Positions 12,271 through 33,300 of a DNA stretch of 64,000 bases are shown here, piece by piece. Every line of letters begins with the position of its first letter. The stretch's first letter is position 1. The DNA is from Ylistrum balloti (Eukaryota). A model generated the notes under the pieces. The model made no database searches and had not been told where the DNA came from. It was given only the letters and a program-made list of their open reading frames with translations. The stretch lies in assembly GCF_031769215.1 (NCBI RefSeq), contig NW_026781890.1:248001-312000 (forward strand), written 5' to 3'. The translations under genes were made by a program, and so were the position numbers.

Positions 12271-15109
12271 CGTACCAAATAGTTCACGACTGAAAAAAGG
12301 AACCAGAATAATTAACTTTATGATACCTTTTCACTGAGATTATTCACGATTGATAAAAACAGAAAATAAAACTTTATTGTGGTGCTACATCACTTATATA
12401 TATTAATTTAAACGTCAATTTGAAGTATTTAGCATTATGTTAATTTTTCGCTTTTATTATCATTATTTTCGCGTATCTTTTCCATTTTCTATGTAAATAT
12501 ATTCACATAGATACGGTAACCATGTACATATTTTTCTGATTAAATTGTTTGTAACGTAATCGCAAACACCTGATATAAAACACAGATGTAACGGTGTAGA
12601 GGATAACTGTAAAGATCGACCGAACACACATAAACTATAACAGTAGTATGTTCTCACTGGGCTGTCAGTTAGGTTTCTTCTACAGTGGAGGACTCCTGTA
12701 CCTGTAGGACAAGCTCAACACGATTAATTACTCGACCTACACATGATTAGTGGCGACAAGGGACCAACAAGTGTCTTCGCTAAAACACTACATATCTGAT
12801 ATAGATCTCACGTTCTACATATTTATCTGCACCGGTAAGGACTCTGATTATCATATTATGCCACTTCGTTCGGAGTTTACAGCTGTACTGGACAAAGCAA
12901 TGCTATTGGATATTATTATGTAACAGGTATGTGGTTTTATTCATATGTACTGAATTCATGTTTAATTACTGTTGTAAATCAGGAAAAGTATGCTTATTTT
13001 GTTTTCTTGTCTAAATTGATTAAGTGGTTTCTTTATTGCAAGACTTTGGGTGTAGGTAACTAAGACCAACGATAACACACGTAAATTATCAATGTTGAAT
13101 TAATCCACTTCACACGAGTAATTAATGTATTAGATTTCTCATGTGTTTAACGTATTAATTAATTTAGAATGTTTTATATTGGGAATCAAATATACTGAAA
13201 AATGTTATATTAATATCATGTGCTCTATGCATTTTTTGTTTATTAGTTCCTATACCATATTGTATATCAGTCGAAGAAATGTCCGCTGAAGGCTACTTAG
13301 TATATCATATACCAGTAGAAGAAAAAAAAAACACGACACATTCACTGCCAAACGCTGTATAACTGACATAAATGTATCTAAACGACATGAAGATGTGTAA
13401 GTGAATACAAATATGGCTCAGTAATGTTCGTTATAGTGGGCTGGCTAGTTGTATTTCCTGTTGTGTGATACAGACCTGGTTTTTTTAGGTCTTTTTTTTA
13501 CAATGTTTACTACGTACGACAGCAAAGCGTGTGCCTAGGCAGAGCATGTCGCCCCAGGACACACCAAAGAACAAGGCTAGAGGGTTACACACAAACGACA
13601 TAGTGAATAGAATATTTCAACACATTTCTCATGAAACATTTGTTTCATCCTTCAATGATTAATGCTAAGAAGTGTGGAAATCTGGAAAGGAAAGGTAGCG
13701 ACCGAAACTAGCGTTAAAGTTTACTGAGGTACTAGATTGTTCAACAGGTTTGGTTAACTTTCAATAATGTCTGGAAAATATGAAAAGTGACTTCTGTTGT
13801 TTATATATAATTCTATCACGTGTCGATGATGACAGGGAATCGAAATACAATCGTTCTTATGTTAAGATAATGATAGGCAGATGCACTTACCTCTAATTTA
13901 ACAAATTCAAATATGAATGTTGGATATTTTAAGAGAGCGTCAAGTATATGTGTATATGGATTCAAAAAGACATGTGGGATATATCTGCAGGCCTAAAGGT
14001 CCTCCTGCATACTTCAATATCAACTGTCTCAACAGATTGCACAATAGCTGCACAGTTATACAAATCTAGAGTTCGACAGACTGACACGTGATAAATCTTT
14101 CAGCATTCGTTTGTGACCTCTTCAGCACATCTTTCGACTTTGCATTTTCTTCTTTGTGGTTACAAGTATTGAAAACAAATGATTAAAAAATAGAATTTTA
14201 ATCAAATTTAATCAGAGTTTTAAAGGAAATGTTGCATTGTTTTATTTGTAGGTTCAAAACAATATGATATTTGCTACATAGAAGTATATCATGTAAGAGA
14301 TATATAAATGATCTCTTATTGTCATATATATAAACTTTAAATGGCATTTTAATTAATACAATGATAATTAACGATAAATGATGGATTTTTTCCATTATCT
14401 AATAAAATGCGGTTTTCAGGTGATCAACATTTGGTTGTATTTGCTTCAGTTGTTGGAGACATCAATTTGAAGAAGAAAACAAGATATAACAGAAAATTGC
14501 AAACATCTTTTTTAAAGTAGACATTGGTACTGGTTGTATCTGTCTGATTATTCTTGATTTTGTGGATGAGTGAAATCTTTGGGGACTCTACAACATAGCT
14601 GATAATTAAGGTTAAGCTGATAATACAAACCTCTAACACCAGTGTATTGTATATGTATGTTAATTGTCAACTGACACCAGACATTTATGAGTTTTACTTA
14701 AGTACGTTACACATTGTTGAAAGGTTACAGTGACAACTTCAGAGATACAGTTTAATGAGTTCATTCTTGGAGATGTTTGCCTTTAAATAAATATTTCAGT
14801 AGTTTTCTGATTTTTGCGGATTTGTTTCTGTCGCTTATTTACAACCTGTGCGGTCTCAACAGTGATATATAATGTTCAATACATTTATTGTTGGAACTCT
14901 TTGATGTGGAATTTTATGATAAAAGCAGTCTATATATCAGTGAGCGTTACATTTAGACTAAGATCGGTACACTGCTGTCTTACAGACAGTTCCAGTCGGA
15001 TGATGGGACCTTTGTTATGCCGAGTAAAATGTACAGATAATTGCATCCTGAAGGCTTGTTGAACGTGTGAGCAAAAATGATGTTTGGAGTAAAAATACAA
15101 AACATGGAT

Positions 15110-15744: not shown

Positions 15745-15885
15745 NNNNNNNNNNNNNNNNNNNNNNNNNNNNNNNNNNNNNNNNNNNNNNNNNNNNNNNN
15801 NNNNNNNNNNNNNNNNNNNNNNNNNNNNNNNNNNNNNNNNNNNNNNNNNNNNNNNNNNNNNNNNNNNNNNNNNNNNNNNNNNNNN
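15745..15885. other. Assembly gap (141 N)
   Basis: Run of N directly after the 37-bp array. Confidence 0.99.
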
Positions 15886-16760
15886 CATGTGGCTCACATC
15901 TGATAATCAGTACACATTCTGGACCCTATTGACCTGTCATCCTCGATACTACATGAGTTACGAACTCTTTCACTCTCTACAATCCCTGAATATGTCATAG
16001 CAAACCTGAAGGTTTCATGTGCATCACCATGTGGATAAGACCAGTTTGATCATCAAATGAATCACGAGGTCGCACAGCGGTATGTTGCATTGGCTTTGAA
16101 GTTGAATGTCTCTCCTTTGTAATATTCAAAGGAGCGTATCAGTCTGTGATTACTACGTCCATTTCTCGTGGGACCCTCTATAGATCAATCAAATTACTCT
16201 GCGTGTGCCTTCAAATTTTGTCATGACAAGTTCCAGAGGTGCAGAATGCGAAAGTAATCGTAACCCCTGGATTATAGAGGATGTTGATAAGTGTGATGGT
16301 GGTGGTTACATGTTACCTTTTATAAAGTGATGTATGTGTTTTGATTTTAACATAACATCACAACGTACAGTGTTCATAGCTGGTCAGACCTTAAAGGAAC
16401 AATTATGAAATTTGAAATTTGAAGCTTATTTCTGTTTTTCATATGAGTTAATAACCCTTTCAATCTTTTTTTATCTCATTTATTTCTTTAGATAGTGTAT
16501 TTTAAAAGTTTTGCTACATCCAATTTCTTTGTACATGGTATATTAGTTATCTAAAAACAAATCGTACTTTAACAGTGAATCCTCTCGTTTGGTAAAAAAA
16601 ATTACAGCGAATCTTTTCTTCGTTTTATTTTAGGTATGTCTTCATGGACGAAAGTTCTTCGATGGATTGTCTGTGAAACTGAGTAGTAAAGTTATGGTTG
16701 ACAGGAAACCAACATACCCAGAGATATTCATTTTCAATTACCATTATTATCATCAAAACC

Positions 16761-19700
16761 ATGAAAGCGGGATATATCAAGGAAATCCAGGTGTTTTTAT
16801 ACATGTGCATAGTTGGAAGCTTTGTGTCATCCCTTGATTCTGAAAGATGTGACGTTCCAGTCTGTATGAATAAGACGAGTCTCTTGCCATCCATTAATAT
16901 GTTTAGTCTCCATGGCAACTATGTGCCTTTCAAAGGGATGGCGTACTTACTTTCGCCACCACAAGGTATGCACTGCTATATAAATCTCACCACCATTTTA
17001 CACAACTACAATTTCACCCACGATCCAGCTGTAGCTGTATTGTCTCTCCATTGTCAGCGACCGTACGTCATACATATGAGTGGGTATACTGGGGATTCCC
17101 TCAGCCATATCTGGTACTACTTCCAAATGCAAGGATGCAGAACAACCTACATGAGTTTGAACCGCTTATCTACTGTTGTCGACCTGAAAACCATCACCCT
17201 GCCTGGTAGGGCTTACATACACACCAATGCTACAGACTGTCTTTCACCAAACCAATCCATTCCGAAATGTCACAGCATTTATAACTTACATTCTATATGG
17301 ATAACTCATTCTTATCGCTACCCAGAACAGGACCTCGATGACTTGTTTCATTGCGCTGATACGTTCCCTAATATGACAGAACTAACTATAACCAATATGT
17401 CTCTAACGGAACTGCCACCGTCTGTTATAAGAAAGATTCCTAACGTTCAATCCTTAGAAATATCTAATTGTCAACTCACACTTCCACCCAAAGACTTTCC
17501 ATGGACAGACCAATCAGTTAGGTTAAAGGGTAATCTCACCATGGAAGACTATTTCTTGGAACATTATGGAAAACCGTTTAACATAGAAATGGATCCCAAT
17601 CTGTATAGAAGAATTCTGAATCTCAATTTTAATCGAATAACAAATCTATCAAATGTCTCGTTTAGAGGCTATCTCCAAATGATACAATTGTCGGGAAATG
17701 GGCTGGTTGAAATCGGATCTTCAACATTTTACCATCTCGTTGGTATTCAGCATATTGACTTGTCTATAAACAAGCTGCAGTCGTTACCGGAAGTTCTTTT
17801 CCAAGGTCTAAGCAGTCTTCGTCATATTGATTTAGGTAGCAATGCGATAAAGTCATTACCTGCTCTAGTTTTCAAAGACGTAACAAACGTTGTATATCTA
17901 AACCTTGCTAACAATTCCCTGGTTCATCTACCTTCTGGTGTTTTTTCAACATTATCACAATTGAAAGAAATCCATTTAGAGTATAACCAATTGGTGACAA
18001 TAGAAGCCAGATCGTTTCTCATGACTTCTATTACCCTAACCAAGTTGTATTTTGATAGTAACCCACTCAAGGTCATTCCTGACATCGTGTTCTACCTGCG
18101 CTACCTCAGTACCGCTTTTCTCAGGAATACAAACATATCTTTTAACAACTTGACAGAGATCACGTCACGTGTCAACTGGCCTCGCATGACTGATGCCGTT
18201 ATGGACTCCACCAGTAGTGCCAATCTAGACCTTAATAAACCAGCTGTCACATTAAGAAAGGTGGACCTTACCGGAAGTGCAATAACAACAGTATGGATGA
18301 CACAAAATTTAACACAATTTCAGCACACATTTCTTCTTCTTGTTTTTCGCCATTTTCATTTCATTTTAGAAGAAAATAGTGTAACTTGTGATTGTAATAT
18401 CGGCACATTCTCAAAGTGGATTCATAAGCAAAAGCAAGATGGACTTTTCACTGGAAAAGAATATTTCTTCAAAGAATGGTTTTGCAAATACCCAGTTGAA
18501 CTCAGGGGCAGACTACTCCTTGATGTAAAACCAGAAGAGACTTACTGTGCTATTAACGTGTCTAACTGCCCAGAAGAATGTTGGTGCTACAAGCGATCTG
18601 TGTCGAACGTAATCATTGTGGACTGTCGAGGCCGAAGACTGGAGACATTACCGACTGTTTTGCCAGACGGTCGTCTCGACTTATGGTTCCACCAGAACAA
18701 CATTACTGTGCTAAAACACAAGACTTATCTGTCTAGAGTAAGACAGCTCGTCCTCAGTCACAATAACCTAGAACTCATCGAAAGCTCGGCAATATCTTCT
18801 CTCACCAATGCAATGCTACTTCACCTCGATTCAAATCTCTTAGCGACACTGCCAGTTCAATTTCGGGACATACAAGCATCATCGATATTGCTTAAGAACA
18901 ATCCTTTTCGGTGTGATTGCAATACTCTATGGATGAAGTCATGGATATTAAAACACCAAAGTCGTATTCATGACTGGACAAATATTGCATGTAACAGCCA
19001 TAACGACGACGGAGAGCAGTTTGTAGGTCTCTCCGACAACGAATTTGTTTGTGTGGAGGATTTTGACTCCATGAAGCACGTCATCACTCCAGCTGTGTCT
19101 AGTTCACTCTCTCTGGCAGTATTTTTGATAGCACTGGGGTTACTCTATATCTATCGCCTGGAAATGAAAGTCCTCCTGTATATTTACTGTGGTATCCATC
19201 CATTCGACAAAGACAAGAAAGGAGGAAAAGAGATAATAGATGCAGCTGTAATACACGCTGCGGGAATTACAGACTGGGTGATGAAAAACATTGTCACTTA
19301 TCTCGAGGAGGACGCACAACATTATATTATCTGTGAGATAAACAGGGATTTTGTTGCGGGGTTTTCTTATCAGGAGAATATAGTAAGTATAGTACGGAAA
19401 AGCAAACGGATGATTTTAGTCCTCTCGGACGAGATGACGGACACACACGACATGTTTAAAGTTGCATGGAGAGAGGCACAATTGAAAATCAAAGAAAAAA
19501 GAACGAATTATGTTATTGTAATAGGCCACAACAGGTCTCGAAAGAAGCTTACTAACAAAGACCTTAAACGCTACTTGAAAAGAGGAAGGTTTGTGCATAC
19601 AGGTGAAAGTCTCTTTCACGAGAAAATATTATATTCAATGCCTAATTATAAACACACTGCTGACAACGGTGTAGTTCGGGGCCTTCCTGACATTCGAAAA

Positions 19701-20516
19701 TGCATACAGAATACATATGATGCGGATGACAAAGAAGAAATTGAATTCGATGCATTCCTTGCCTACGGCGAAACTGATAGAAACTTTGCTGTCAACGACC
19801 TTAGAATAGACTTGGAGAAAAATGGATATACTTTAATTATACCAGATCGTGACTTTCCCCCAGGAGCATCAAAGGAGGAAAATGTGCTCCTGGCTGTATC
19901 AAGTTGTCACCACACGCTTTTCATCGTGTCAGGGGAACATCTAGAGGACGAATGGTCTCTATTCACCTTCCGATCAGCCAGCGAGAAATCCTTACGCAAC
20001 AAGAGTAATCATCTTATCCTCTTGTCCGCACAAAAAGAGGATATAAACATTGTGGATGAAGAAGTCCGATATCATCTAAAGACACAAGTAAGTCTTGATG
20101 TACATAGTCCCTGGTTCTGGGATAGACTCCATAAGGCTTTGCCACCAAAGGCTAATCGTCAAGGTCAAGGTCAGCAAGGTGTCGTAGACGACAAGGAAAA
20201 CATTACAGATATAGAAAGAATAAAAATGCTGAAAGAAGAAGAAAATGAAGAAAAGTTGAAAGAAATCGAAAGAATAAAAATGTTCAAGGAAGACAAGAAT
20301 GAGGACAACGAAAAGGAAAAATACGAGGAAAGAATGAAAAATGGGAATTCATTTCTTCTGCATGAAAAAGATTTATTCGACAATGACGTGGACATCAAAC
20401 AAATCGATGGCAATGAGAGTATTTTGTTCAAAGCAAAAATGAAAGAAGCTGAAATAGAAAATGAAGCAGAAAAAGATAACGAAAGCCAAAAAGAAATGGA
20501 AATTACTTTTGTATAG
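16761..20516 (+). CDS. Toll-like receptor, multiple-cysteine-cluster (protostome-type) ectodomain, twin TIR domains, ~1251 aa, uninterrupted CDS
   Basis: First in-frame ATG at 16761 gives a signal-peptide-like N-terminus. LxxLxLxxN LRRs; internal LRRCT (VTCDC...CKYP) followed by LRRNT (CPEECWC...VDC); second LRR block with LRRCT (NPFRCDC). TM at ~19080-19155; TIR1 ~19233-19643; TIR2 ~19746-20144 (FDAF...RDFPPG...WFWDRL); charged tail; TAG at 20514-20516. Confidence 0.95.
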   Translation: MKAGYIKEIQVFLYMCIVGSFVSSLDSERCDVPVCMNKTSLLPSINMFSLHGNYVPFKGMAYLLSPPQGMHCYINLTTILHNYNFTHDPAVAVLSLHCQRPYVIHMSGYTGDSLSHIWYYFQMQGCRTTYMSLNRLSTVVDLKTITLPGRAYIHTNATDCLSPNQSIPKCHSIYNLHSIWITHSYRYPEQDLDDLFHCADTFPNMTELTITNMSLTELPPSVIRKIPNVQSLEISNCQLTLPPKDFPWTDQSVRLKGNLTMEDYFLEHYGKPFNIEMDPNLYRRILNLNFNRITNLSNVSFRGYLQMIQLSGNGLVEIGSSTFYHLVGIQHIDLSINKLQSLPEVLFQGLSSLRHIDLGSNAIKSLPALVFKDVTNVVYLNLANNSLVHLPSGVFSTLSQLKEIHLEYNQLVTIEARSFLMTSITLTKLYFDSNPLKVIPDIVFYLRYLSTAFLRNTNISFNNLTEITSRVNWPRMTDAVMDSTSSANLDLNKPAVTLRKVDLTGSAITTVWMTQNLTQFQHTFLLLVFRHFHFILEENSVTCDCNIGTFSKWIHKQKQDGLFTGKEYFFKEWFCKYPVELRGRLLLDVKPEETYCAINVSNCPEECWCYKRSVSNVIIVDCRGRRLETLPTVLPDGRLDLWFHQNNITVLKHKTYLSRVRQLVLSHNNLELIESSAISSLTNAMLLHLDSNLLATLPVQFRDIQASSILLKNNPFRCDCNTLWMKSWILKHQSRIHDWTNIACNSHNDDGEQFVGLSDNEFVCVEDFDSMKHVITPAVSSSLSLAVFLIALGLLYIYRLEMKVLLYIYCGIHPFDKDKKGGKEIIDAAVIHAAGITDWVMKNIVTYLEEDAQHYIICEINRDFVAGFSYQENIVSIVRKSKRMILVLSDEMTDTHDMFKVAWREAQLKIKEKRTNYVIVIGHNRSRKKLTNKDLKRYLKRGRFVHTGESLFHEKILYSMPNYKHTADNGVVRGLPDIRKCIQNTYDADDKEEIEFDAFLAYGETDRNFAVNDLRIDLEKNGYTLIIPDRDFPPGASKEENVLLAVSSCHHTLFIVSGEHLEDEWSLFTFRSASEKSLRNKSNHLILLSAQKEDINIVDEEVRYHLKTQVSLDVHSPWFWDRLHKALPPKANRQGQGQQGVVDDKENITDIERIKMLKEEENEEKLKEIERIKMFKEDKNEDNEKEKYEERMKNGNSFLLHEKDLFDNDVDIKQIDGNESILFKAKMKEAEIENEAEKDNESQKEMEITFV

Positions 20517-20679
20517 AAGGTTTGGCGTTACAGGAACCCATTTATTCAAAGTCTCGTTCTGTTAAGAACCAATACCGAATTCCTTCAGATCTTAAATTCG
20601 TGCAGAAAATTCCTCGCTGTAAGTGTTTATAACGACGTAGAAAACCTATACATAGATACTTCGTAGCGTGTGTGTGTAA

Positions 20680-20938
20680 AGGTTTCGCTGTATGTGTCAA
20701 GAATGAGATGATAAAGAAAAAGTAAAGGTTTCACAGCATGTGTCAAGAATGAGATATTAAAGAAAAAGGAAATGTTTCGTAGTATGTGTCAGGAATAAGA
20801 TAATAAAGAAAAATGTAAAAGTTTCACAGTATGTGTCAAGATTGAGATAATAAAGAAAAAGTAAAGGTTTCGCAGTAAGTGTCAAGAATGAGGTGATAAA
20901 GAAAAATGTAAATGTTTCGCAGTATGTGTCGAGGATAA
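20680..20938. repeat. ~46-47-bp minisatellite x~5.5, probably in the TLR 3' UTR
   Basis: tgtgtcaagaatgaga-like core at about 20693, 20740, 20785, 20832, 20878, 20925. Confidence 0.85.
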
Positions 20939-20991: not shown

Positions 20992-21463
20992 AATAACGTA
21001 GAACAAAGTTGGACAATGTTAGTTTGATGTGTACAGTATTTAATGACGTAGAACAAAGTTGGACAATGTTTGCTTTATGTGTACAGTATGTAATGACGTA
21101 GAACAAAGTTGGACAATGTTTGCTTTACGTGTACAGTATCTAATGACGTAGAACAAAGTTGGACAATGTTTGCTTTATGTGTACAATATTTAATGACGTA
21201 GAACAAAGTTGGACAATGTTTGCTTTATGTGTACAGTATCTAATGACGAAGAACAAAGTTGGACAATGCTTAATTTATGTGTACAGTATGTAATGACGTA
21301 GAACAAAGTTGGACAATGTTTGCGTTATGTGTACAGTATCTAATGACGTAGAACAAAGTTGGACAATGTTTGCTTTATGTGTACAGTATGTAATGACGTA
21401 GAACAAAGTTGGACAATGTTTGCTTTATGTGTACAGTATGTAATGACGTAGAACAAAGTTGGA
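20992..21463. repeat. 50-bp minisatellite x~9.5
   Basis: aatgacgtagaacaaagttggacaatg recurs every 50 bp (21042, 21092, ...). Confidence 0.95.
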
Positions 21464-24400
21464 GAATTGACGAGAAACTTTAAATGAATTAACAGTCCCA
21501 GTTAAATAGATCTAATAACATTCATGTTAAGATTATTAAAATAAGTATACTGTATACAGCTCAAGTGTTTTATCCTCAGGTATTCCTTTTTGCAGAAATG
21601 GAAAGACAAAAATTAGACAAAAAAAAAAAAAACGAAAAAAAAAAGACTACACAAAAAAAATGCACGTGTAATAAATATGTAATATTGAGAATCATGTGAC
21701 AGGAACGTACAAGTAGAGTGTGTATATCTGACATTAAAAAAGCGACACACGCTGCCTAGTTATATATCCCTGTATTTTATTGTCAAAAATTGTACTAGCT
21801 TTTTATGTGTTGTTTTATGGTAGTTAAATTGTCAATTCTGTTTCAGGGAAATCTAAATGATTAGGTACAGTATAATTTATATATAATGTTTCCTCTTCTG
21901 CATTATTTATATGCATATATTATGTCTTATCATCATAAAAACAGGTCACACTACTTGACATTTCATTGGACCAAAGATGACGACTTGATATTTTTATGTA
22001 GTGATATAGAATTCAGATGTGTCGAGTGTCCGCCTTTCTATAAACATTGGCAGTTTATGGATAATTGACAGATTGGGTATCTCTTAATTTCAAAGTTTTA
22101 ACTATCGATTAATCAATCAGTTTCAACTCAGAACTAGATTTAATGTTAATATTATTATAAATGTTATACAAAGAAAATAGCAATGTAATTCGGATTTGAA
22201 ATGGTACAATATTAAAAATGCCGTCTCATGGTCGGAATATCTGTGCAAATTAATTGAGATCTAGAAAGGAAATTGGAATTTTAAACTTCAGTCTCGATCA
22301 CTATATGTAAAATGTATACACAAGTTATGCTTTATCACGTGTGTTCTGCATTACCATTATCTATTATCATGAATGACAATAAAATTTTAAGTTTGGAATT
22401 TGATTCTTGTGATTTCATTGGCCTCAAACTTGTCATAACTACATGTGTATTAATGTGTAACACGAAGCCTTAGGGATTCCTCGCAATTACCGACCTTTTT
22501 AAATAATAAGTAATTTATAAAGAAAACTTATCCTTGACATCAAACACAACTAACACTGTGGGGTTGGGGTTATCGTGATTTAAATCGCTTTTGCTGTACC
22601 ACTGTATGATGGGGTATGTCTCGAGGATGTCTGATTTTCTCTTGTCATAGAGGTTTATCTCGCTTCAGCTGAGATTCCAGGCGCTATTGACAGGTAATAC
22701 ACAAGTTACGGAAGAGGTTTTTTTTCGATGATTTATTTATCCCGCCATTGCCTTCCCGTGTCCATGTTTACTTAACTTTGGGCATCTAGATGTCATTGAC
22801 AAACTTGTCACCTGTAACACAAAGCATCCCTCTGTTCGGTTATCTTGACCTGTTTAACTAACAAACATGTAGCGTGTAGGGCGACATGGGTCAGCTGACT
22901 ACTACGAGACAAAATGGCGCTGAAAGAGTCAGCTTTGGTATAAATCTTGTCAAGGAAGGAGAAAAAACCTCGGTATATACATACATACATACATGTGCCA
23001 TAAACATCTTCATTAAGTGTGTTGTTTAACAGCCTTTAAATGTCTACTACTCGGTAACTTTTTTTAAAAATTAGATAAGCAGAATAAATCATTATTTTTC
23101 AATGTTAAATAAGTGATCGTTATAATTCTTCTTTTACCGAGAATATCATGAAGTTGAAGGACCTGGTTTGTATCAGTACCATAAGAAAGCTCACAAGTCT
23201 CCAAACGATACAAAACTAAACAAAAATATATATTATATATTGATTCTATGCTAAAACGATTCAACTATTGGTTATTGCTTACTCACCCCCCACCCCCTCT
23301 CACCAGCAACCCATACCCACTCCCTTGTTGAAATTTAAGAGCGGTGTTATTCAAAACGTGTGTGTTTTTTGTACTTTTAGGGGGGGAAATATACATAACT
23401 AAAAAGTGTATTTCCTCAACCTGTCACGTTTCGACAAATCGTTGTAATTATTACAATAACACATCAATACTGGATGAAATATGCCGATTGCAATTAAATA
23501 ATCACTAATATTTCACAGTGTCAAAATCTGCCATCAGAGACTAAATAATGTATTCACTGACGTGATTAATCAATACGATATACAGGATAAGACGATAGCC
23601 TTCATTTCGGAAATCCCATTTGTCACCAATTCTTTTTTTTAGATATTCCATTTCTTTATTACACATTAAATCTAACTCTAAAGAAAGGTATTTTCTAGAT
23701 TTTTTATGATAACCAATAGGATTTTACATATCCGGAAAACACAATCAGTTAATTAACGTTTTACGTGTTAGATTTTAATCAATGTATTCACACTTTCTCC
23801 GGGCCACGAACTGACATCTACGGTACATTTAAATTACATTTTTTTAATATACGCCCCATTAGTCAGCAAAATCAAGAAAAGTTTTACATCATGGTGGATA
23901 CAATATATAGAGAAAGAGAATGTACAATATATCATACAGTTGTTTTATTTTATCTTTTCTTCATCGATTAGCGTCGTGTATATATTTACTCAGAGAACAT
24001 ATTTTTTAAAAACATTTTCTACTCTAAATCAATATAAATACAAATGGATTTTTCTAAAAGTAATTTTATGTACTTTATCTTGATTCATGGATAAAATCGT
24101 ATTTATTCTTGATGAATTGTCTCGTAGCGTGCATATTACAGAATCGTCTAGAACTTTGGGTATTATTGTATCGACCAACTCCGACTGATAAACACTATAA
24201 AGATATACGTATTTCACTGATACAAATTCTAGAATTTTTTAAGGAATATATTTCGCTTATTGAAATGGTAAAGTATCATTATAGATAAGGTGTTTATAAA
24301 TGTGACATTTGGAGGATATTTCTATTAAATGTTGTAGGAATTTAAACCAATACTTAATTATTCTAGATTTCCTGTAATGACCTAGTTCACAATATACAAT

Positions 24401-27376: not shown

Positions 27377-30300
27377 CTATTTCTTGCGACCTCCTCTTTC
27401 CTTCAGCTGAAGTTGAACTGTCGCTCCTTTCATGAAATTGTAGTAAGCTAGAGAGTTGGAGTCTTTCATGAAAATTCCCTGTGTATAAAGAGTCATCATA
27501 TTAGTGGGATGTAATAAAAGATATCTTTAACCTTTCAAAAAAAATTATGCAATTTCAATTGGAATACTTAGAGATATTTGGATTTTTCAACCCATGCATG
27601 ATGTACAAATATAAAACACAGTAAAATATATACAGTGAGAAATTCAGATATATAACATAATTAATAGCCAGCCAACATTTGTATGATATAATCCAGAATT
27701 CAACTAAACTTGTAAAAGCAAAGATGGGTGAAACAAATGTATCCCATATTCCTACATAGCCGTCAATGTACAATAGGTGAATTTATGTACATGTGTAAGA
27801 GCTTCACACAAGACTACAGATTACCATCCCTGTGCTTTACAGTTTACAGCTACTAATACAGGTCTATTTACAGATTTCCACAACCATGATTTTTATAAAA
27901 GTAATTACCTCGTATTGGAGCTTCTGTTTTCCAGCTGGAAGTCCAAGACTCTCATTCAGCTTAGCTTTCATTACAGAGATCTGAAAACAAATCATTGTAA
28001 CAGTGTGAAGGAATTTCAGCTGTATCAGTAAAACCTTTGAGGTGTGAAGAAATTTCAGGTGTAGCAGTAAAACCTTTGAGGTGTGAAGAAATTTCAGGTG
28101 TAGCAGTAAAACCTTTGAGGTGTGAAGAAATTTCAGGTGTAGCAGTAAAACCTTTGAGGTGTGAAGGAATTTCAGGTGTAGCAGTAAAACCTTTGAGGTG
28201 TGAAGGAATTTCAGGTGTAGCAGTAAAAACCTTTGAGGTGTGAAGGAATTTCAGGTGTAGCAGTAAAAACCTAGAGGCAGTGAACGTAAATGAGAGCATC
28301 TGAACATTTAAATGAAACAAAAGTCTTAGGAAAAGGTGACAAAAAGTAGACAGCCCGTTAGAGTATGTAGAATTCTAACATCACTTCAATAAGGTAATCA
28401 ACTTACAGACTTCTTTAATCTTATAACTAATTGATCGTAAACAAATAAATTGTAAATATGGTTGGAGAGGTAGGAAGCCTATTAATGATCATGCTATCCT
28501 TCTCATCAATATACTTTAACTTGCATCTAAAATTTACCTCCTATTTATATTATTCCTTGATCCAGATTTCTATCCAATTTATATATTTCTGAAGATTTCC
28601 CTTCACCAACATATTTCTGTAGTCATGATTGACATCATATACGTCAATACGTTACTGTAGTGATTGTAGTCCCTCTGTCTCTTCCTATACATTTCTGTAA
28701 CCTAGAATTCCCTCTCATCGATATACGTCATTAAGTAACTGTAGTGACTGTAGTCCCTCTGTCTCTTCCTATACATTTCTGTAACCTAGAATTCCCTCTC
28801 ATCGATATACGTCATTAAGTTACTGTAGTGACTGTAGTCCCTCTCTGTCTCTTCCCATACATTTCTGTAACCTAGAATTCCCTCTCATCGATATACGTCA
28901 TTAAGTTACTGTAGTGACTGTAGTCCCTCTCTGTCTCTTCCCATACATTTCTGTAACCTAGAATTCCCTCTCATCGATATACGTCATTAAGTTACTGTAG
29001 TGACTGTAGTCCCTCTCTGTCTCTTCCCATACATTTCTGTAACCTAGAATTCCCTCTCATCGATATACGTCATTAAGTTACTGTAGTGACTGTAGTCCCT
29101 CTCTGTCTCTTCCCATACATTTCTGTAACCTAGAATTCCCTCTCATCGATATACGTCATTAAGTTACTGTAGTGACTGTAGTCCCTCTCTGTCTCTTCCT
29201 ATACATCTCTGTAACCTAGAATTCCCTCTCATCGATATACGTCATTAAGTTACTGTAGTGACTGTAGTCCCTCTCTGTCTCTTCCTATACATCTCTGTAA
29301 CCTAGAATTCCCTCCCATCAATATACGTCATTAAGTTACTGTAGTGACTGTAGTCCCTCTGTCTCTTCCTATACATTTCTGTAACCTAGAATTCCCTCTC
29401 ATCGATATACGTCATTATGTTACTGTAGTGACTGTAGTCCCTCTCTGTCTCTTCCTATACATTTCTGTAACCTAGAATTCCCTCTCATCAATATACGTCA
29501 TTAAGTTACTGTAGTGACTGTAGTCCCTCTCTGTCTCTTCCTATACATTTCTGTAACCTAGAATTCCCTCCCATCAATATACGTCATTAAGTTACTGTAG
29601 TGACTGTAGTCCCTCTGTCTCTTCCTATACATTTCTGTAACCTAGAATTCCCTCTCATCGATATACGTCATTATGTTACTGTAGTGACTGTAGTCCCTCT
29701 CTGTCTCTTCCTATACATCTCTGTAACCTAGAATTCCCTCTCATCAATATACGTCATTAAGTTACTGTAGTGACTGTAGTCCCTCTGTCTCTTCCTATAC
29801 ATTTCTGTAACCTAGAATTCCCTCCCATCAATATACGTCATTAAGTTACTGTAGTGACTGTAGTCCCTCTGTCTCTTCCTATACATTTCTGTAACCTAGA
29901 ATTCCCTCTCATCGATATACGTCATTAAGTTACTGTAGTGACTGTAGTCCCTCTGTCTCTTCCTATACATTTCTGTAACCTAGAATTCCCTCTCATCGAT
30001 ATACGTCATTAAGTAACTGTAGTGACTGTAGTCCCTCTGTCTCTTCCCATACATTTCTGTAACCTAGAATTCCCTCTCATCGATATACGTCATTAAGTAA
30101 CTGTAGTGACTGTAGTCCCTCTGTCTCTTCCTATACATTTCTGTAACCTAGAATTCCCTCCCATCAATATACGTCATTAAGTTACTGTAGTGACTGTAGT
30201 CCCTCTGTCTCTTCCCATACATTTCTATAACCTAGAATTCCCTCCCATCAATATACGTCATTAAGTTACTGTAGTGACTGTAGTCCCTCTGTCTCTTCCC

Positions 30301-33300
30301 ATACATTTCTGTAACCTAGAATTCCCTCTCATCGATATACGTCATTAAGTAACTGTAGTGACTGTAGTCCCTCTGTCTCTTCCTATACATTTCTGTAACC
30401 TAGAATTCCCTCCCATCAATATACGTCATTAAGTTACTGTAGTGACTGTAGTCCCTCTCTGTCTCTTCCTATACATTTCTGTAACCTAGAATTCCCTCTC
30501 ATCAATATACGTCATTAAGTTACTGTAGTGACTGTAGTCCCTCTCTGTCTCTTCCTATACATTTCTGTAACCTAGAATTCCCTCCCATCAATATACGTCA
30601 TTAAGTTACTGTAGTGACTGTAGTCCCTCTCTGTCTCTTCCCATACATCTCTGTAACCTAGAATTCCCTCTCATCAATATACGTCATTAAGTAACTGTAG
30701 TGACTGTAGTCCCTCTCTGTCTCTTCCCATACATCTCTGTAACCTAGAATTCCCTCTCATCGATATACGTCATTAAGTTACTGTAGTGACTGTAGTCCCT
30801 CTCTGTCTCTTCCTATACATCTCTGTAACCTAGAATTCCCTCTCATCGATATACGTCATTATGTTACTGTAGTGACTGTAGTCCCTCTCTGTCTCTTCCT
30901 ATACATCTCTGTAACCTAGAATTCCCTCCCATCAATATACGTCATTAAGTAACTGTAGTGACTGTAGTCCCTCTCTGTCTCTTCCTATACATCTCTGTAA
31001 CCTAGAATTCCCTCTCATCGATATACGTCATTAAGTTACTGTAGTGACTGTAGTCCCTCTCTGTCTCTTCCTACACATCTCTGTAACTTAGAATTCCCTC
31101 TCATCGATATACGTCATTAAGTTACTGTAGTGACTGTAGTCCCTCTCTGTCTCTTCCTATACATTTCTGTAACCTAGAATTCCCTCTCATCGATATACGT
31201 CATTATGTTACTGTAGTGACTGTAGTCCCTCTCTGTCTCTTCCTATACATTTCTGTAACCTAGAATTCCCTCTCATCGATATACGTCATTATGTTACTGT
31301 AGTGACTGTAGTCCCTCTCTGTCTCTTCCTATACATTTCTGTAACCTAGAATTCCCTCTCATCGATATACGTCATTAAGTTACTGTAGTGACTGTAGTCC
31401 CTCTCTGTCTCTTCCTATACATTTCTGTAACCTAGAATTCCCTCTCATCGATATACGTCATTAAGTTACTGTAGTGACTGTAGTCCTTCTTTGTCTCTTC
31501 CTATACATTTCTGTAACCTAGAATTCCCTCTCATCGATATACGTCATTAAGTTACTGTAGTGACTGTAGTCCCTCTGTCTCTTCCTATACATCTCTGTAA
31601 CCTAGAATTCCCTCCCATCAATATACATCATTAAGTTACTGTAGTGACTGTAGTCCCTCTCTGTCTCTTCCTATACATTTCTGTAACCTAGAATTCCCTC
31701 TCATCGATATACGTCATTAAGTTACTGTAGTGACTGTAGTCCCTCTCTGTCTCTTCCTATACATTTCTGTAACCTAGAATTCCCTCTCATCGATATACGT
31801 CATTAAGTTACTGTAGTGACTGTAGTCCCTCTCTGTCTCTTCCTATACATTTCTGTAACCTAGAATTCCCTCTCATCAATATACGTCATTAAGTTACTGT
31901 AGTGACTGTAGTCCCTCTGTCTCTTCCTATACATCTCTGTAACCTAGAATTCCCTCTCATCGATGTAAACATATCATTTAGATTTCCTTCCCTTCCCTAA
32001 CTCTATAGAGTCCAGATTACTCAAACATCTACACTGCCTGTCTCTTCAGCACTATGTGTGAGTTTGACTACTATACATACCGTGTCTGTAAGAGGAAGAG
32101 TAAAGGACAGTGTCTGACCATTCAGCTTCCATTCTGCCTTTTCTGTAACCTTGGGGATGACCACTTTGAAGGTAACCGGTCCCTAAAGTACACAAAAAGA
32201 CAACGATGGTTATGAAAGAAATTAGAAAGCATTATCAAAATATTTCAAATACTTTCAGAAGCTATAAAACAAGCAGCCATGGATGACACTTTAACCATGA
32301 ACATGTTCTAATCTGTGATATTTTGTCAGGAACATTATTCATAAAATACATAAAATCTCTAATACAAATTTGATGTTCTGCAGTATATATCAATATCTAA
32401 TTCTCTAAAAGAAGAACATATTTCACACATACTTCCTGACCAAAACTTAAGTTTGATACCATATAAAAATGCCAATAAAACACATTTAATAATCAAATCA
32501 TGCCAACAGTTTAACAAATAATAGTTTACCTTGTTTCTTTTGAGGAATTCTCCTTCAGGAACAAGCTGGTCCTCTGTTTTTTGTTTCTTTGCCATTGGTT
32601 CATCCTCCATTGAGGGCGGCGGGGGATGGTGACTCTTGTGAGGTGGACCTGGGGGTCTGTTGCCCATCAGGGAAGGTGGATAATTTGGGGGATGGGGAGG
32701 GCCATGAGGCATCATATGTTGTGGCATGTGCATTTGAGGATGGATTCCTTTATAGAAAAAAATGAAATAGTAAAATGGTAACATCAGAGTCTTGAACACT
32801 TCAATGCATCAAAACCTATTTACATTATAGGATAATTACATCTACACAATCTATAATTGTATTTTTTCTTAAGAACAAGAGATCCGAAAGGGATCCTGGT
32901 GTCCACCATCGTTTGATCTTTATTTGCTCTTTGAGTTTTGGGTCTTCTCCCTCATTTCTCTTCTCTGTTTTTCCTCTTAATTATGAGACAACTGAACATT
33001 CGTTTGCAGAAATAGTGATGAGAATCTTTACCTGTCAAATCCAAGAGAGTTGCCTGAAAGCCATTTTGTTTTTTCTGATCAATCCCAAAATCAAACAGGC
33101 ACAAGTAGAGATCAAAGGGAACATACATATTAAATCTGAGAGATCCATATGGTACTTCTTAGGAAATAAGGAAATAGGAATCTTTATGATGGCACCTGTT
33201 GGCCATTTTTCCCTTATCAGTACCAAAACCAAACAGGCACAACTAGGGATCAAGAGTAACATACACATGAAATTTGAAAAAAGAACCTACGCTAACAAAC

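What the first reader, a model, noticed from the sequence alone, without database searches (positions are those of the whole stretch)
16761..20516. Toll-like receptor with two tandem TIR domains behind a Toll-type multi-cysteine-cluster ectodomain
Seen: one ORF with signal peptide, LRRs, an internal LRRCT/LRRNT pair, TM, and then two complete TIR folds (~19233-19643 and ~19746-20144) joined by a ~35-aa linker. Known: canonical TLRs have one TIR and assemble TIR pairs by receptor dimerisation; twin-TIR TLRs have been reported in some lophotrochozoans but are functionally poorly characterised. Inference: a covalent TIR pair could pre-form an adaptor-binding surface or auto-inhibit.
Basis: partly seen in the sequence, partly recalled or inferred. 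Interest (0 to 1): 0.7.

Follow-up and report, generated by a model that had tools for sequence, protein, structure and literature searches.

The report
Scallop twin-TIR Toll receptor gene
This is an intact scallop gene for a Toll-type immune receptor with two signalling (TIR) domains in a row, a bivalve-specific receptor class that is already published and partly tested; the only new element is a prediction that the two domains stack head-to-tail like the first two links of a MyD88 signalling chain.

Summary
Window 16761-20516 (+) is one uninterrupted 1251-codon ORF. It encodes a signal-peptide-like N-terminus, an LRR ectodomain with an internal LRRCT/LRRNT cysteine pair and a second LRRCT, one TM helix and two TIR domains. 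Each TIR passes Pfam's cut-off when scanned alone (30.3 and 37.2 bits against 21.3).

The class is not new. Orthologues at 82-89% identity are annotated in three scallops. Relatives at 40-56% with the same two-TIR layout occur in oysters, mussels, unionids and clams, one of them named 'Twin-TIR-TLR'. Papers from 2014-2023 describe this class (Toll-2, twin-TIR, SPP-2TIR), including two copies in a scallop. A published reporter assay gave full length > TIR-2 only > TIR-1 only.

- TIR1 and TIR2 are separate old clades, and both are under strong constraint.
- TIR2 is canonical. TIR1 has lost the BB-loop proline in 36 of 38 relatives.
- A controlled complex prediction (0.72 against a best control of 0.01) docks the TIR1 BB loop on the βD/βE/αE face of TIR2. 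That is the head-to-tail contact of MyD88/MAL assemblies.

This suggests a covalent two-subunit seed for adaptor assembly. It is a hypothesis and may reflect the model's memory of solved filaments.

The parts
12602..12927 (+). Probable non-coding first exon (5' UTR) of the receptor gene; inferred only
   Evidence: The block is single-copy in the window's own genome. It is 67% identical over 350 nt to the equivalent position about 3 kb upstream of the Pecten orthologue. It ends in CAG|GTATGT, a consensus splice donor. No transcript data were available.
16620..16634 (+). Candidate 3' splice acceptor (pyrimidine tract followed by AG) ahead of the coding exon; inferred
   Evidence: The sequence reads ttcgttttattttag|g. 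Similarity to the Pecten locus starts at 16686, 75 nt before the ATG.
16761..20516 (+). Complete coding sequence of a twin-TIR Toll-like receptor: 1251 aa plus stop, in a single exon
   Evidence: ORF with no stops. The orthologous CDS are likewise uninterrupted in Pecten (L019 6001-9783) and Argopecten (L020 3001-6738). Overall dN/dS against Pecten is 0.09.
16761..16832 (+). Signal-peptide-like N-terminus (aa 1-24)
   Evidence: Hydrophobic core at aa 8-17, Kyte-Doolittle about 2 over 11 residues, followed by SS|LD. No signal-peptide predictor was available, so this is inferred.
16836..17360 (+). N-terminal cysteine-bearing module (aa 26-200) with no family match
   Evidence: No Pfam hit. C72, C98, C126, C170 and C198 are kept in 30-34 of 38 relatives. 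The AF2 model is confident here (pLDDT about 90) and shows long strands unlike the LRR part. The atlas search gave only a weak lead (0.88, ECPIP).
17361..18380 (+). First LRR block (aa 201-540)
   Evidence: Pfam LRR_8, LRR_5 and LRR_4. The AF2 model has short strands about every 24 residues. LxxLxLxxN motifs occur at aa 305, 329, 353, 377, 401 and 426.
18381..18635 (+). Internal LRRCT (C543, C545, C575, C596) followed by LRRNT (C603, C607, C609, C622)
   Evidence: All eight Cys are kept in 37-38 of 38 relatives. The best structural matches of the ectodomain model are Toll-type receptors with this same layout.
18636..19058 (+). Second, short LRR block and membrane-proximal LRRCT (C718, C720, C744, C764)
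   Evidence: LRR_8 in the 18201-19199 piece. The Cys are kept in 37 of 38 relatives.
19089..19160 (+). Transmembrane helix (aa ~777-800)
   Evidence: It is the only 19-residue window with Kyte-Doolittle above 1.6.
19167..19223 (+). Juxtamembrane motif KVLLYIYxGxHPFDKD (aa 803-821)
   Evidence: It is the best-conserved stretch of the protein: 95-100% identical among scallops and 84% to oysters.
19224..19646 (+). TIR1 (aa 822-962), the divergent membrane-proximal TIR, with BB loop RDFVAGFSYQEN at aa 862-873
   Evidence: PF01582 at 30.3 bits when scanned alone. PDB sequence matches to the TLR7 and TLR3 TIRs. The AF2 model shows β-α alternation at pLDDT 86-93. Forms its own clade at 100/100. dN/dS 0.021. 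The BB-loop Pro is replaced by A/V/I in 36 of 38 relatives.
19647..19733 (+). Inter-TIR linker (aa 963-991; 25-41 aa in relatives)
   Evidence: Lengths. dN/dS 0.17. pLDDT is low at model residues 163-168, followed by a short helix at 176-184.
19734..20150 (+). TIR2 (aa 992-1130), the canonical TIR, with box 1 FDAFLAY, BB loop DRDFPPGASKEEN and box 3 WFW
   Evidence: PF01582 at 37.2 bits when scanned alone. PDB sequence hits to the TLR10, TLR1 and TLR6 TIRs. VIA-align Z 18.9 to Hydra TRR-2 TIR and 17.8 to MyD88 TIR over model residues 191-328. Its clade sits among the single-TIR TLRs of the same genome.
20151..20513 (+). Acidic/lysine-rich C-terminal tail (aa 1131-1251) ending T-F-V
   Evidence: 25 E and 18 K among 121 residues. 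No Pfam hit. It is the fastest-evolving part (dN/dS 0.31), yet the last three residues are T/S-x-V in all four scallops.

Best explanation
The ORF is a functional, single-exon gene of a pectinid scallop. It encodes a twin-TIR Toll-like receptor of the bivalve class published as Toll-2, twin-TIR TLR or SPP-2TIR. I put that identification at about 0.97.

Proposed mechanism (inferred, about 0.5). The Toll-type ectodomain dimerises on ligand binding. In the cytoplasm, TIR2 is the canonical adaptor-facing domain. TIR1 is an ancient, strongly constrained extra TIR. Its BB loop, which has lost the usual proline, is permanently docked on the βD/βE/αE ('EE') face of TIR2 in the same chain. That is the head-to-tail contact that builds each strand of MyD88 and MAL TIR assemblies. 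Each receptor chain would therefore carry a ready-made two-subunit strand whose free end is the intact BB surface of TIR2. Published work indicates that incoming MyD88 TIR domains dock on such a BB surface. Receptor dimerisation would then place two such strands side by side, giving a four-TIR nucleus. Nucleation of the adaptor assembly would be easier than with a single-TIR receptor.

Shown here: domain identity, conservation and clade structure. Predicted only: the TIR1-TIR2 contact. Inferred: seeding of MyD88.
For: Identity:
- Both TIRs pass Pfam's cut-off when scanned separately.
- Orthologues at 82-89% identity exist in Pecten, Mizuhopecten and Argopecten. Relatives at 40-56% with the same architecture occur across bivalves, including 'Twin-TIR-TLR [Cyclina sinensis]'.
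- TIR1 is 139-141 aa, TIR2 138-143 aa and the linker 25-41 aa in 37 of the 38 relatives.
- The ectodomain model (pLDDT 90.2) best matches Drosophila Toll 4LXR (E 7e-20), Aedes Toll5A and C. elegans TOL-1.

Division of labour between the two TIRs:
- TIR2 keeps FDAF, RDFxPG and WFW. TIR1 has RDF[VI][AVI]GF, without the Pro, in 36 of 38 relatives.
- Most other TLR loci of this genome matched only the TIR2 part of the twin-TIR query.
- TIR1 and TIR2 are each one clade at 100/100, and TIR2 lies among the single-TIR TLRs.
- TIR1 is not decaying: dN/dS is 0.021 against 0.053 for TIR2 and 0.31 for the tail.

Predicted contact:
- The AF2 model of the linked pair has pLDDT 82.6 and pTM 0.81.
- The complex test of TIR1 with TIR2 scored 0.72 against a best control of 0.01. 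That mark was reached by 51 of 78 solved complexes and 2 of 108 mismatched pairs. The three runs agreed in at least 95% of contacts, and the partner's pLDDT was at least 81.
- The interface is TIR1 861-873 against TIR2 1077, 1083-1087, 1108-1112 and 1116-1126.
- This matches the BB-surface/EE-surface intrastrand interface described for MyD88, including the residue at the 'Pro position' sitting between βE and αE (PMC8110528).
- The interface columns are more conserved than the rest of each domain (permutation p 0.011 and 0.018).

Published assay: full length > TIR-2 only > TIR-1 only in S2 cells (PMC4929906). This fits TIR2 as the adaptor-facing unit and TIR1 as an enhancer.
Against: - The interface is a prediction. 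MyD88, MAL and TRIF/TRAM filaments with this contact are solved, so the score may reflect memory of a generic TIR-TIR mode.
- The controls were unrelated proteins, not other TIRs, so specificity for this pair was not tested.
- I could not read the AF2 coordinates, so I do not know whether the linked model uses the same interface.
- BB loops and αE helices are conserved in most TIRs, so the conservation enrichment is weak support.
- The apparent size covariation between position 866 and position 1126 rests on only one informative independent pair.
- The published assay used over-expression of a unionid receptor in insect cells with a shrimp promoter.
- TIR1's own EE face (LFxEKxLYSMP) is also nearly invariant. 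The model does not explain this.
- The genome's second twin-TIR copy has ADC in place of RDF in TIR1 and Leu in place of Pro in TIR2.
Confidence: 0.55

Rival explanations
1. Simple valency. The two TIRs act independently, and each recruits MyD88, so the receptor binds more adaptor molecules. This is the explanation offered by Cao et al. 2016.
For: Both single-TIR constructs kept some activity, and the full receptor was the strongest (PMC4929906). Both domains are strongly constrained.
Against: TIR1 lacks the BB-loop proline in 36 of 38 relatives and has non-canonical box 1 and box 3 motifs. The two domains are predicted to pack together through that very loop rather than to be free. The TIR-1-only construct was the weakest.
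Confidence: 0.2
2. Dual adaptor use. TIR1 recruits a different TIR adaptor from TIR2 (a SARM-, TRIF- or TIRAP-like protein, or one of the many bivalve TIR-only proteins). One receptor would then feed two pathways.
For: TIR1 has its own invariant surface motifs (RDFxxGFSxQEN and LFxEKxLYSMP). Its best PDB sequence matches are the TLR7 and TLR3 TIRs rather than TLR1/2/6/10. From my own knowledge, TLR3 also lacks the BB-loop proline and does not signal through MyD88.
Against: There is no direct evidence for a second adaptor. The predicted intramolecular contact already uses the TIR1 BB loop. The PDB matches for TIR1 are weak (E 1.9e-6 and 1.4e-3).
Confidence: 0.13
3. Auto-inhibition. TIR1 masks TIR2 until ligand binding releases it.
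For: A confident intramolecular TIR1-TIR2 contact is predicted. A degenerate TIR could act as a pseudo-partner.
Against: The predicted contact covers the EE face of TIR2, not the BB face on which incoming MyD88 is thought to dock. Deleting TIR1 lowered rather than raised reporter activity.
Confidence: 0.08
4. Artefact or dying gene. The second TIR would come from an assembly duplication, a fused neighbour or a pseudogene.
For: There is a 141-N gap 0.9 kb upstream of the ATG.
Against: TIR1 and TIR2 are only 20% identical, so this is not a recent duplication artefact. The same architecture occurs in 38 proteins from independent assemblies. dN/dS is 0.02-0.05 in both TIRs. The frame has no stops.
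Confidence: 0.01

Closest known systems
Bivalve twin-TIR TLRs, also called the Toll-2 family or SPP-2TIR (HcToll-2 of Hyriopsis cumingii, Ren 2014; Cao 2016, PMC4929906; Gerdol 2017 as cited in PMC5845394 and PMC6836662; Saco 2023, PMC10279657; Cyclina sinensis 'Twin-TIR-TLR')
   Same: The whole architecture is shared: signal peptide, multi-cysteine-cluster LRR ectodomain, one TM and TIR1-linker-TIR2. The window protein is 44% identical over 96% of the cytoplasmic query to the Cyclina protein and 82-89% identical to scallop orthologues. This genome has two such loci, as reported for Chlamys farreri and for the Pacific oyster.
   Different: Nothing of kind differs. The long E/K-rich tail ending T/S-x-V is specific to scallops. 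The head-to-tail packing proposed here is not in the papers I read.
Drosophila Toll, Aedes Toll5A and C. elegans TOL-1 (protostome-type, multi-cysteine-cluster Toll receptors)
   Same: These are the best structural matches of the ectodomain model: 4LXR E 7.4e-20, 7B1C E 1e-17 and 8SUF E 3.4e-15. The layout of LRRCT, LRRNT, LRR and LRRCT ahead of the TM is shared.
   Different: Those receptors have a single TIR. TM-scores are only about 0.4. The first 175 residues of the scallop ectodomain have no family match. Whether the ligand is Spätzle-like was not tested.
[quoted passage not shown]
   Same: The predicted TIR1-to-TIR2 contact uses the BB loop of one TIR and the βD, βE and αE elements of the next. 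The residue at the proline position sits between βE and αE. This is the published intrastrand interface.
   Different: In the scallop receptor the two subunits are covalently linked and non-identical (20% identity). The docking loop has A/V/I in place of Pro. No assembly has been observed; the contact is a prediction.
Vertebrate TLR1/2/6/10 and TLR3/7 TIR domains
   Same: TIR2 matches the TLR10 and TLR1 TIRs (E 5.8e-12 and 4.9e-11). TIR1 matches the TLR7 and TLR3 TIRs (E 1.9e-6 and 1.4e-3).
   Different: Identity is 20-25%. Those receptors carry one TIR per chain and form TIR pairs only through receptor dimerisation.

Membership tests
Twin-TIR TLR (Toll-2 / SPP-2TIR) of bivalves | Two TIR domains in tandem in one chain, each recognisable on its own | tested here: met
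   PF01582 scores 30.3 and 37.2 bits on separate halves against a cut-off of 21.3. hhalign of TIR1 against TIR2 gives 98.9% probability. The AF2 model shows TIR-like β-α alternation in both halves. A structural match was obtained only for TIR2; TIR1 was not searched alone.
Twin-TIR TLR (Toll-2 / SPP-2TIR) of bivalves | Type I membrane receptor: signal peptide, LRR ectodomain, single TM | tested here: met
   LRR_8 at E 2.2e-32. One TM at aa 777-800. Hydrophobic N-terminal core; the signal peptide is inferred because no predictor was available.
Twin-TIR TLR (Toll-2 / SPP-2TIR) of bivalves | Multi-cysteine-cluster (protostome-type) ectodomain with an internal LRRCT-LRRNT pair | tested here: met
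   Twelve Cys in CxC...C...C, CxxxCxC...C and CxC...C...C patterns are kept in 37-38 of 38 relatives. The best fold matches are Toll, Toll5A and TOL-1. The Pfam LRRCT and LRRNT models did not score.
Twin-TIR TLR (Toll-2 / SPP-2TIR) of bivalves | Homology to named members, with TIR1 and TIR2 each grouping with their counterparts | tested here: met
   E 1.9e-80, 44% identity and 96% coverage to the Cyclina sinensis Twin-TIR-TLR. The TIR1 clade and the TIR2 clade each have 100/100 support.
Twin-TIR TLR (Toll-2 / SPP-2TIR) of bivalves | Origin of TIR1 by internal duplication of the receptor's own TIR (Saco 2023) | tested here: inconclusive
   The free tree does not join TIR1 and TIR2. However, the AU test does not reject their union (p 0.31). 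TIR1 sits on a long branch.
Twin-TIR TLR (Toll-2 / SPP-2TIR) of bivalves | Activates an NF-kB/AMP read-out, with both TIRs contributing | not testable with these tools
   This is known only from a published assay on a unionid member (PMC4929906).
Head-to-tail (BB surface to EE surface) TIR signalling strand, as in MyD88/MAL | The BB loop of one TIR is buried against βD, βE and αE of the next | tested here: inconclusive
   Predicted with ipSAE 0.72 against a best control of 0.01, with interface residues 861-873 and 1077-1126. This matches the published definition. It is a model only, and no TIR-versus-TIR control was run.
Head-to-tail (BB surface to EE surface) TIR signalling strand, as in MyD88/MAL | Conserved BB-loop proline in the docking loop | tested here: not met
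   TIR1 has A/V/I at this position in 36 of 38 relatives; TIR2 keeps Pro in 32 of 38. In MyD88 the P200A mutant reduced but did not abolish signalling.

The most novel reading that the evidence does not exclude
The tandem TIRs form a hard-wired intrastrand dimer. The proline-less BB loop of TIR1 is permanently docked on the EE face of TIR2. Each chain then presents a two-subunit strand, and a ligand-induced receptor dimer presents a complete 2x2 nucleus for MyD88 TIR polymerisation. If so, this would be a natural covalent form of the seed that vertebrate receptors have to assemble from separate receptor and bridging-adaptor TIRs. It would also give a tractable, monodisperse model for the still unseen receptor-to-adaptor step of TLR signalling.
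Probability: 0.4. Interest if true: 0.55.

Novelty: already known. Interest (0 to 1): 0.27.

Why it matters
As a gene, this is a routine member of a published bivalve receptor class, and it adds nothing to the catalogue.

The possible value is structural. No experimental structure shows how a receptor TIR hands over to adaptor TIRs. If the two TIRs of this receptor really sit in the MyD88-type head-to-tail contact, the roughly 330-residue cytoplasmic region would be a naturally tethered receptor-side seed. Such a seed could be expressed, crystallised or used to nucleate MyD88 assembly in vitro.

The model would also explain why the tandem form signals more strongly than single-TIR Tolls in the published assay. 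It would explain as well why TIR1 has been kept under tight constraint across bivalves despite losing the canonical proline.

Tried and rejected
- Covariation across the predicted interface. Position 866 (A/V/I) and position 1126 (A/S/G) look size-compensating: I always pairs with G, and A never does. Only one informative phylogenetically independent pair exists, so this is not evidence.
- Structural match for TIR1 alone. Every listed VIA-align row fell on TIR2, model residues 187-333.
- AF2 coordinates were not readable, so the interface of the linked model could not be compared with that of the complex run.
- N-terminal 175 aa. There was no Pfam hit, and the atlas gave only a sub-threshold lead (0.88 to ECPIP/C21orf62 clusters). 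I do not adopt that lead.
- Nested-gene idea. The Argopecten orthologue lies inside a photolyase-family gene on the other strand. No PF00875 exon lies on the window's contig. Only that one domain was searched.
- dS between the scallop genera is saturated (about 1.2 or not computable). The dN/dS values are therefore rough, and only their ranking across domains is used.
- NADase (SARM1-like) activity. By my own recollection of the W-x-x-x-E motif, neither TIR has the glutamate. I had no reference sequence in hand to align, so this was not properly tested.
- The large profile search was not run. The word search already settled family membership, and no claim here rests on absence of relatives.
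- Earlier scan notes for this window (a LINE 5' UTR repeat and an SF3A1 donor array) do not bear on this gene.

Full report

Yes. The only ORF of at least 100 aa between 15000 and 22500 runs 16698..20516 on the + strand. From the ATG at 16761 it encodes 1251 residues without a stop.

Pfam on the whole protein gives LRR_8 (E 2.2e-32), LRR_5, LRR_4 and TIR with two matched stretches. I then scanned the two halves of the cytoplasmic region separately:
- 19200-19700 scores PF01582 at 30.3 bits (E 4.5e-7).
- 19701-20201 scores PF01582 at 37.2 bits (E 3.3e-9).
- The curated cut-off is 21.3 bits.

The remaining features are also present:
- There is one TM-grade hydrophobic segment, at aa 777-800.
- The N-terminus has a signal-peptide-like core at aa 8-17.
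- Twelve cysteines form an LRRCT (C543/545/575/596), an LRRNT (C603/607/609/622) and a second LRRCT (C718/720/744/764). They are kept in 37-38 of 38 relatives.
- The Pfam LRRCT and LRRNT models did not score. That part therefore rests on the cysteine pattern and on the fold.

**2. What it is**

A word search with the cytoplasmic part (aa 800-1140) found full-length relatives with the same Pfam content:
- 89% identity in Pecten maximus, 86% in Mizuhopecten yessoensis and 82% in Argopecten irradians.
- 40-56% identity in pearl oyster, oysters, mussels, unionids and heterodont clams.
- One of these is named 'Twin-TIR-TLR [Cyclina sinensis]'.

The window therefore comes from a pectinid scallop. 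I did not identify the species.

The architecture is rigid across these 38 proteins. In all but one, TIR1 is 139-141 aa and TIR2 138-143 aa. The linker is 25-41 aa in all 38.

The orthologous coding sequences in Pecten and Argopecten are likewise single uninterrupted exons.

The window's own genome (648.5 Mb) holds exactly two twin-TIR loci among the candidates scored. One is this gene. The other is a 36%-identical copy on contig C390 that also has two TIRs.

An AF2 model of the ectodomain (pLDDT 90.2, pTM 0.80) best matches Drosophila Toll in its Spätzle complex (4LXR, E 7.4e-20), Aedes Toll5A and C. elegans TOL-1. This supports the 'Toll-type multi-cysteine-cluster' description, although TM-scores are only about 0.4.

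**3. What is already known**

The class is published:
- A Toll with tandem TIRs (HcToll-2) was described in Hyriopsis cumingii in 2014. The name 'twin-TIR' comes from Gerdol et al. 2017, who reported two such loci in the Pacific oyster. Both points are as cited in PMC5845394.
- Saco et al. [quoted passage not shown]
- Cao et al. [quoted passage not shown] These included two Toll-2 genes in the scallop Chlamys farreri, and no complete tandem-TIR Toll was found in gastropods.
In S2 cells the order was full length > TIR-2 only > TIR-1 only.

The finding is therefore correct, but it is not new.

**4. The two TIRs are not equivalent**

TIR1 and TIR2 of this protein share 20% identity. Their profiles match at 98.9% probability.

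In a maximum-likelihood tree of 57 TIRs, TIR1 sequences form one clade and TIR2 sequences another, each with 100/100 support. The TIR2 clade lies among the single-TIR TLRs of the same genome, and TIR1 sits on a long branch. The AU test does not reject a TIR1+TIR2 union (p 0.31). Internal duplication therefore remains possible but is not shown.

Within the genome, most other TLR loci matched only the TIR2 part of the twin-TIR query. The nearest non-twin relative of TIR1 is a single-TIR receptor on C55 with a long open frame (31% identity).

Motif comparison:
- TIR2 keeps the canonical boxes: FDAFLAY, DRDFPPGASKEEN (Pro in 32 of 38 relatives) and WFW.
- TIR1 has ExIDxxVIH, RDF[VI][AVI]GFSxQEN (Pro lost in 36 of 38) and LFxEKxLYSMP.
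- These TIR1 motifs are themselves nearly invariant across bivalves.

TIR1 is not a decaying domain. Against Pecten, dN/dS by region is as follows:

| Region | dN/dS |
|---|---|
| TIR1 | 0.021 |
| TIR2 | 0.053 |
| Linker | 0.17 |
| C-terminal tail | 0.31 |

dS is saturated, so only the ranking should be trusted.

By sequence against the PDB, TIR2 is closest to the TLR10, TLR1 and TLR6 TIRs, and TIR1 to the TLR7 and TLR3 TIRs.

**5. How it most likely works**

An AF2 model of aa 803-1135 built from 36 relatives has pLDDT 82.6 and pTM 0.81. Both halves show TIR-like β-α alternation. A pTM that high for two domains joined by a flexible linker implies a defined mutual orientation. I could not inspect the coordinates. 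The structural matches listed all fall on TIR2 (Z 18.9 to Hydra TRR-2 TIR, 17.8 to MyD88 TIR).

I then ran the controlled complex test with TIR1 (815-965) and TIR2 (985-1135) as separate chains:
- The score was 0.72, against 0.01 for the best of three controls.
- That mark was reached by 51 of 78 solved complexes and by 2 of 108 mismatched pairs.
- The three runs agreed in at least 95% of contacts, and the partner's pLDDT was at least 81.
- The interface is TIR1 residues 861-862, 864-871 and 873, which are the BB loop and the start of αB.
- These contact TIR2 residues 1077, 1083-1087 (βD), 1108-1112 (βE) and 1116-1126 (EE loop and αE).

This is the definition of the 'BB surface-EE surface' intrastrand contact of MyD88 and MAL assemblies. 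It extends to the residue at the proline position (A866 here), which lies between βE and αE (PMC8110528). That paper also argues that incoming MyD88 TIRs dock with their EE face on a free BB face.

The predicted polarity therefore leaves the intact BB loop of TIR2 free for the adaptor. The chain would be a covalent two-subunit strand, TIR1 then TIR2 then MyD88. A ligand-induced receptor dimer would supply a 2x2 nucleus.

This fits two observations. The published activity order is full length > TIR-2 only > TIR-1 only. TIR1 also has a proline-less yet invariant BB loop.

**6. Limits of the mechanism**

- The contact is a prediction and may be recalled from solved filaments.
- The controls were unrelated proteins, not other TIRs.
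- The interface columns are more conserved than the rest of each domain (p 0.011 and 0.018), but BB loops and αE helices are conserved in TIRs generally.
- The suggestive pairing of A866 with A1126 and of I866 with G1126 has only one informative independent contrast.
- I rate the identification at about 0.97 and the head-to-tail mechanism at about 0.5.

**7. Rivals**

- Independent valency is the explanation given by Cao et al. It is weakened by TIR1's degenerate motifs and by the predicted packing.
- A second adaptor for TIR1 cannot be excluded. TIR1's own EE face is invariant and is not explained by my model.
- Auto-inhibition fits poorly. The predicted contact does not cover the BB face of TIR2, and deleting TIR1 lowers activity.
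- An assembly or pseudogene artefact is excluded by the 20% identity between the TIRs, by the conservation in 38 independent proteins and by the low dN/dS.

**8. Gene model and surroundings (inferred)**

A single-copy block at 12602-12933 is conserved at the equivalent position upstream of the Pecten orthologue. It ends in CAG|GTATGT.

A pyrimidine tract followed by AG lies at 16620-16634. Together these suggest a non-coding first exon and a 3.7-kb intron, which contains the N gap at 15745-15885. I left the gap as it is.

Two tandem arrays follow the stop codon.

**9. Verdict**

This is a real and correctly read gene, an ordinary member of a known bivalve receptor class. Interest is low as a discovery. 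It is moderate only for the testable structural hypothesis that the tandem TIRs are a pre-built head-to-tail seed.

Noticed in passing
window 12602-12933 (+) and 16620-16634: A single-copy block is conserved with the Pecten locus at the same relative position upstream of the orthologue. It ends in a consensus splice donor (CAG|GTATGT at 12927/12928). A pyrimidine-tract/AG acceptor candidate lies about 125 nt before the ATG. Together they probably mark a non-coding exon 1 and a 3.7-kb 5' UTR intron of the receptor gene.
   Followed up: partly
window 20676-20930 and 20992-21467: Two tandem repeat arrays lie directly downstream of the stop codon, in the likely 3' UTR or flank. The first is 46 nt x 5.5 copies at 85% matches. 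The second is 50 nt x 9.5 copies at 93% matches.
   Followed up: no
window 16836-17360 (aa 26-200): The N-terminal ectodomain module has five well-conserved cysteines and no Pfam match. In the confident AF2 model it has long β-strands unlike the LRR solenoid that follows. The atlas search gave only a sub-threshold lead to ECPIP/C21orf62-like clusters (0.88). The fold was not identified.
   Followed up: partly
window 20505-20513 (last three codons, T-F-V): The C-terminus ends T/S-x-V in all four scallop orthologues, although the tail evolves fast. Several unionid relatives end T-R-F/V/L, and other relatives end T-K-L, T-A-V or T-E-F. This looks like a class I PDZ-binding motif. It was not tested.
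   Followed up: no
window 19167-19223 (aa 803-821): The juxtamembrane motif KVLLYIYxGxHPFDKD is the most conserved stretch of the whole protein. It is 95-100% identical among scallops and 84% identical to oysters, which is more than either TIR.
   Followed up: no
G000:C390:2761179-2762156 (-), locus L002: This is the second twin-TIR TLR locus of the same genome (open frame 1169 aa, 36% identical in the cytoplasmic part). It is fast-evolving: TIR1 has ADC in place of RDF, and TIR2 has Leu in place of the BB-loop Pro.
   Followed up: partly
L020 (Argopecten irradians CM084277.1), whole locus, minus strand: The Argopecten orthologue lies inside the span of a photolyase/cryptochrome-family gene (PF00875) called on the opposite strand. 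No PF00875 exon was found on the window's contig, so the nesting may not be shared.
   Followed up: partly
window 15745-15885: A run of 141 N lies 0.9 kb upstream of the start codon, inside the putative 5' UTR intron. I left it as it is.
   Followed up: no
window 30001-32000 and 38001-40000: These stretches have strongly negative GC skew (-0.39 and -0.48) and raised GC content compared with their neighbours. The second one lies just downstream of a repeat array noted earlier by the scan at 37230-38382. I did not examine them.
   Followed up: no
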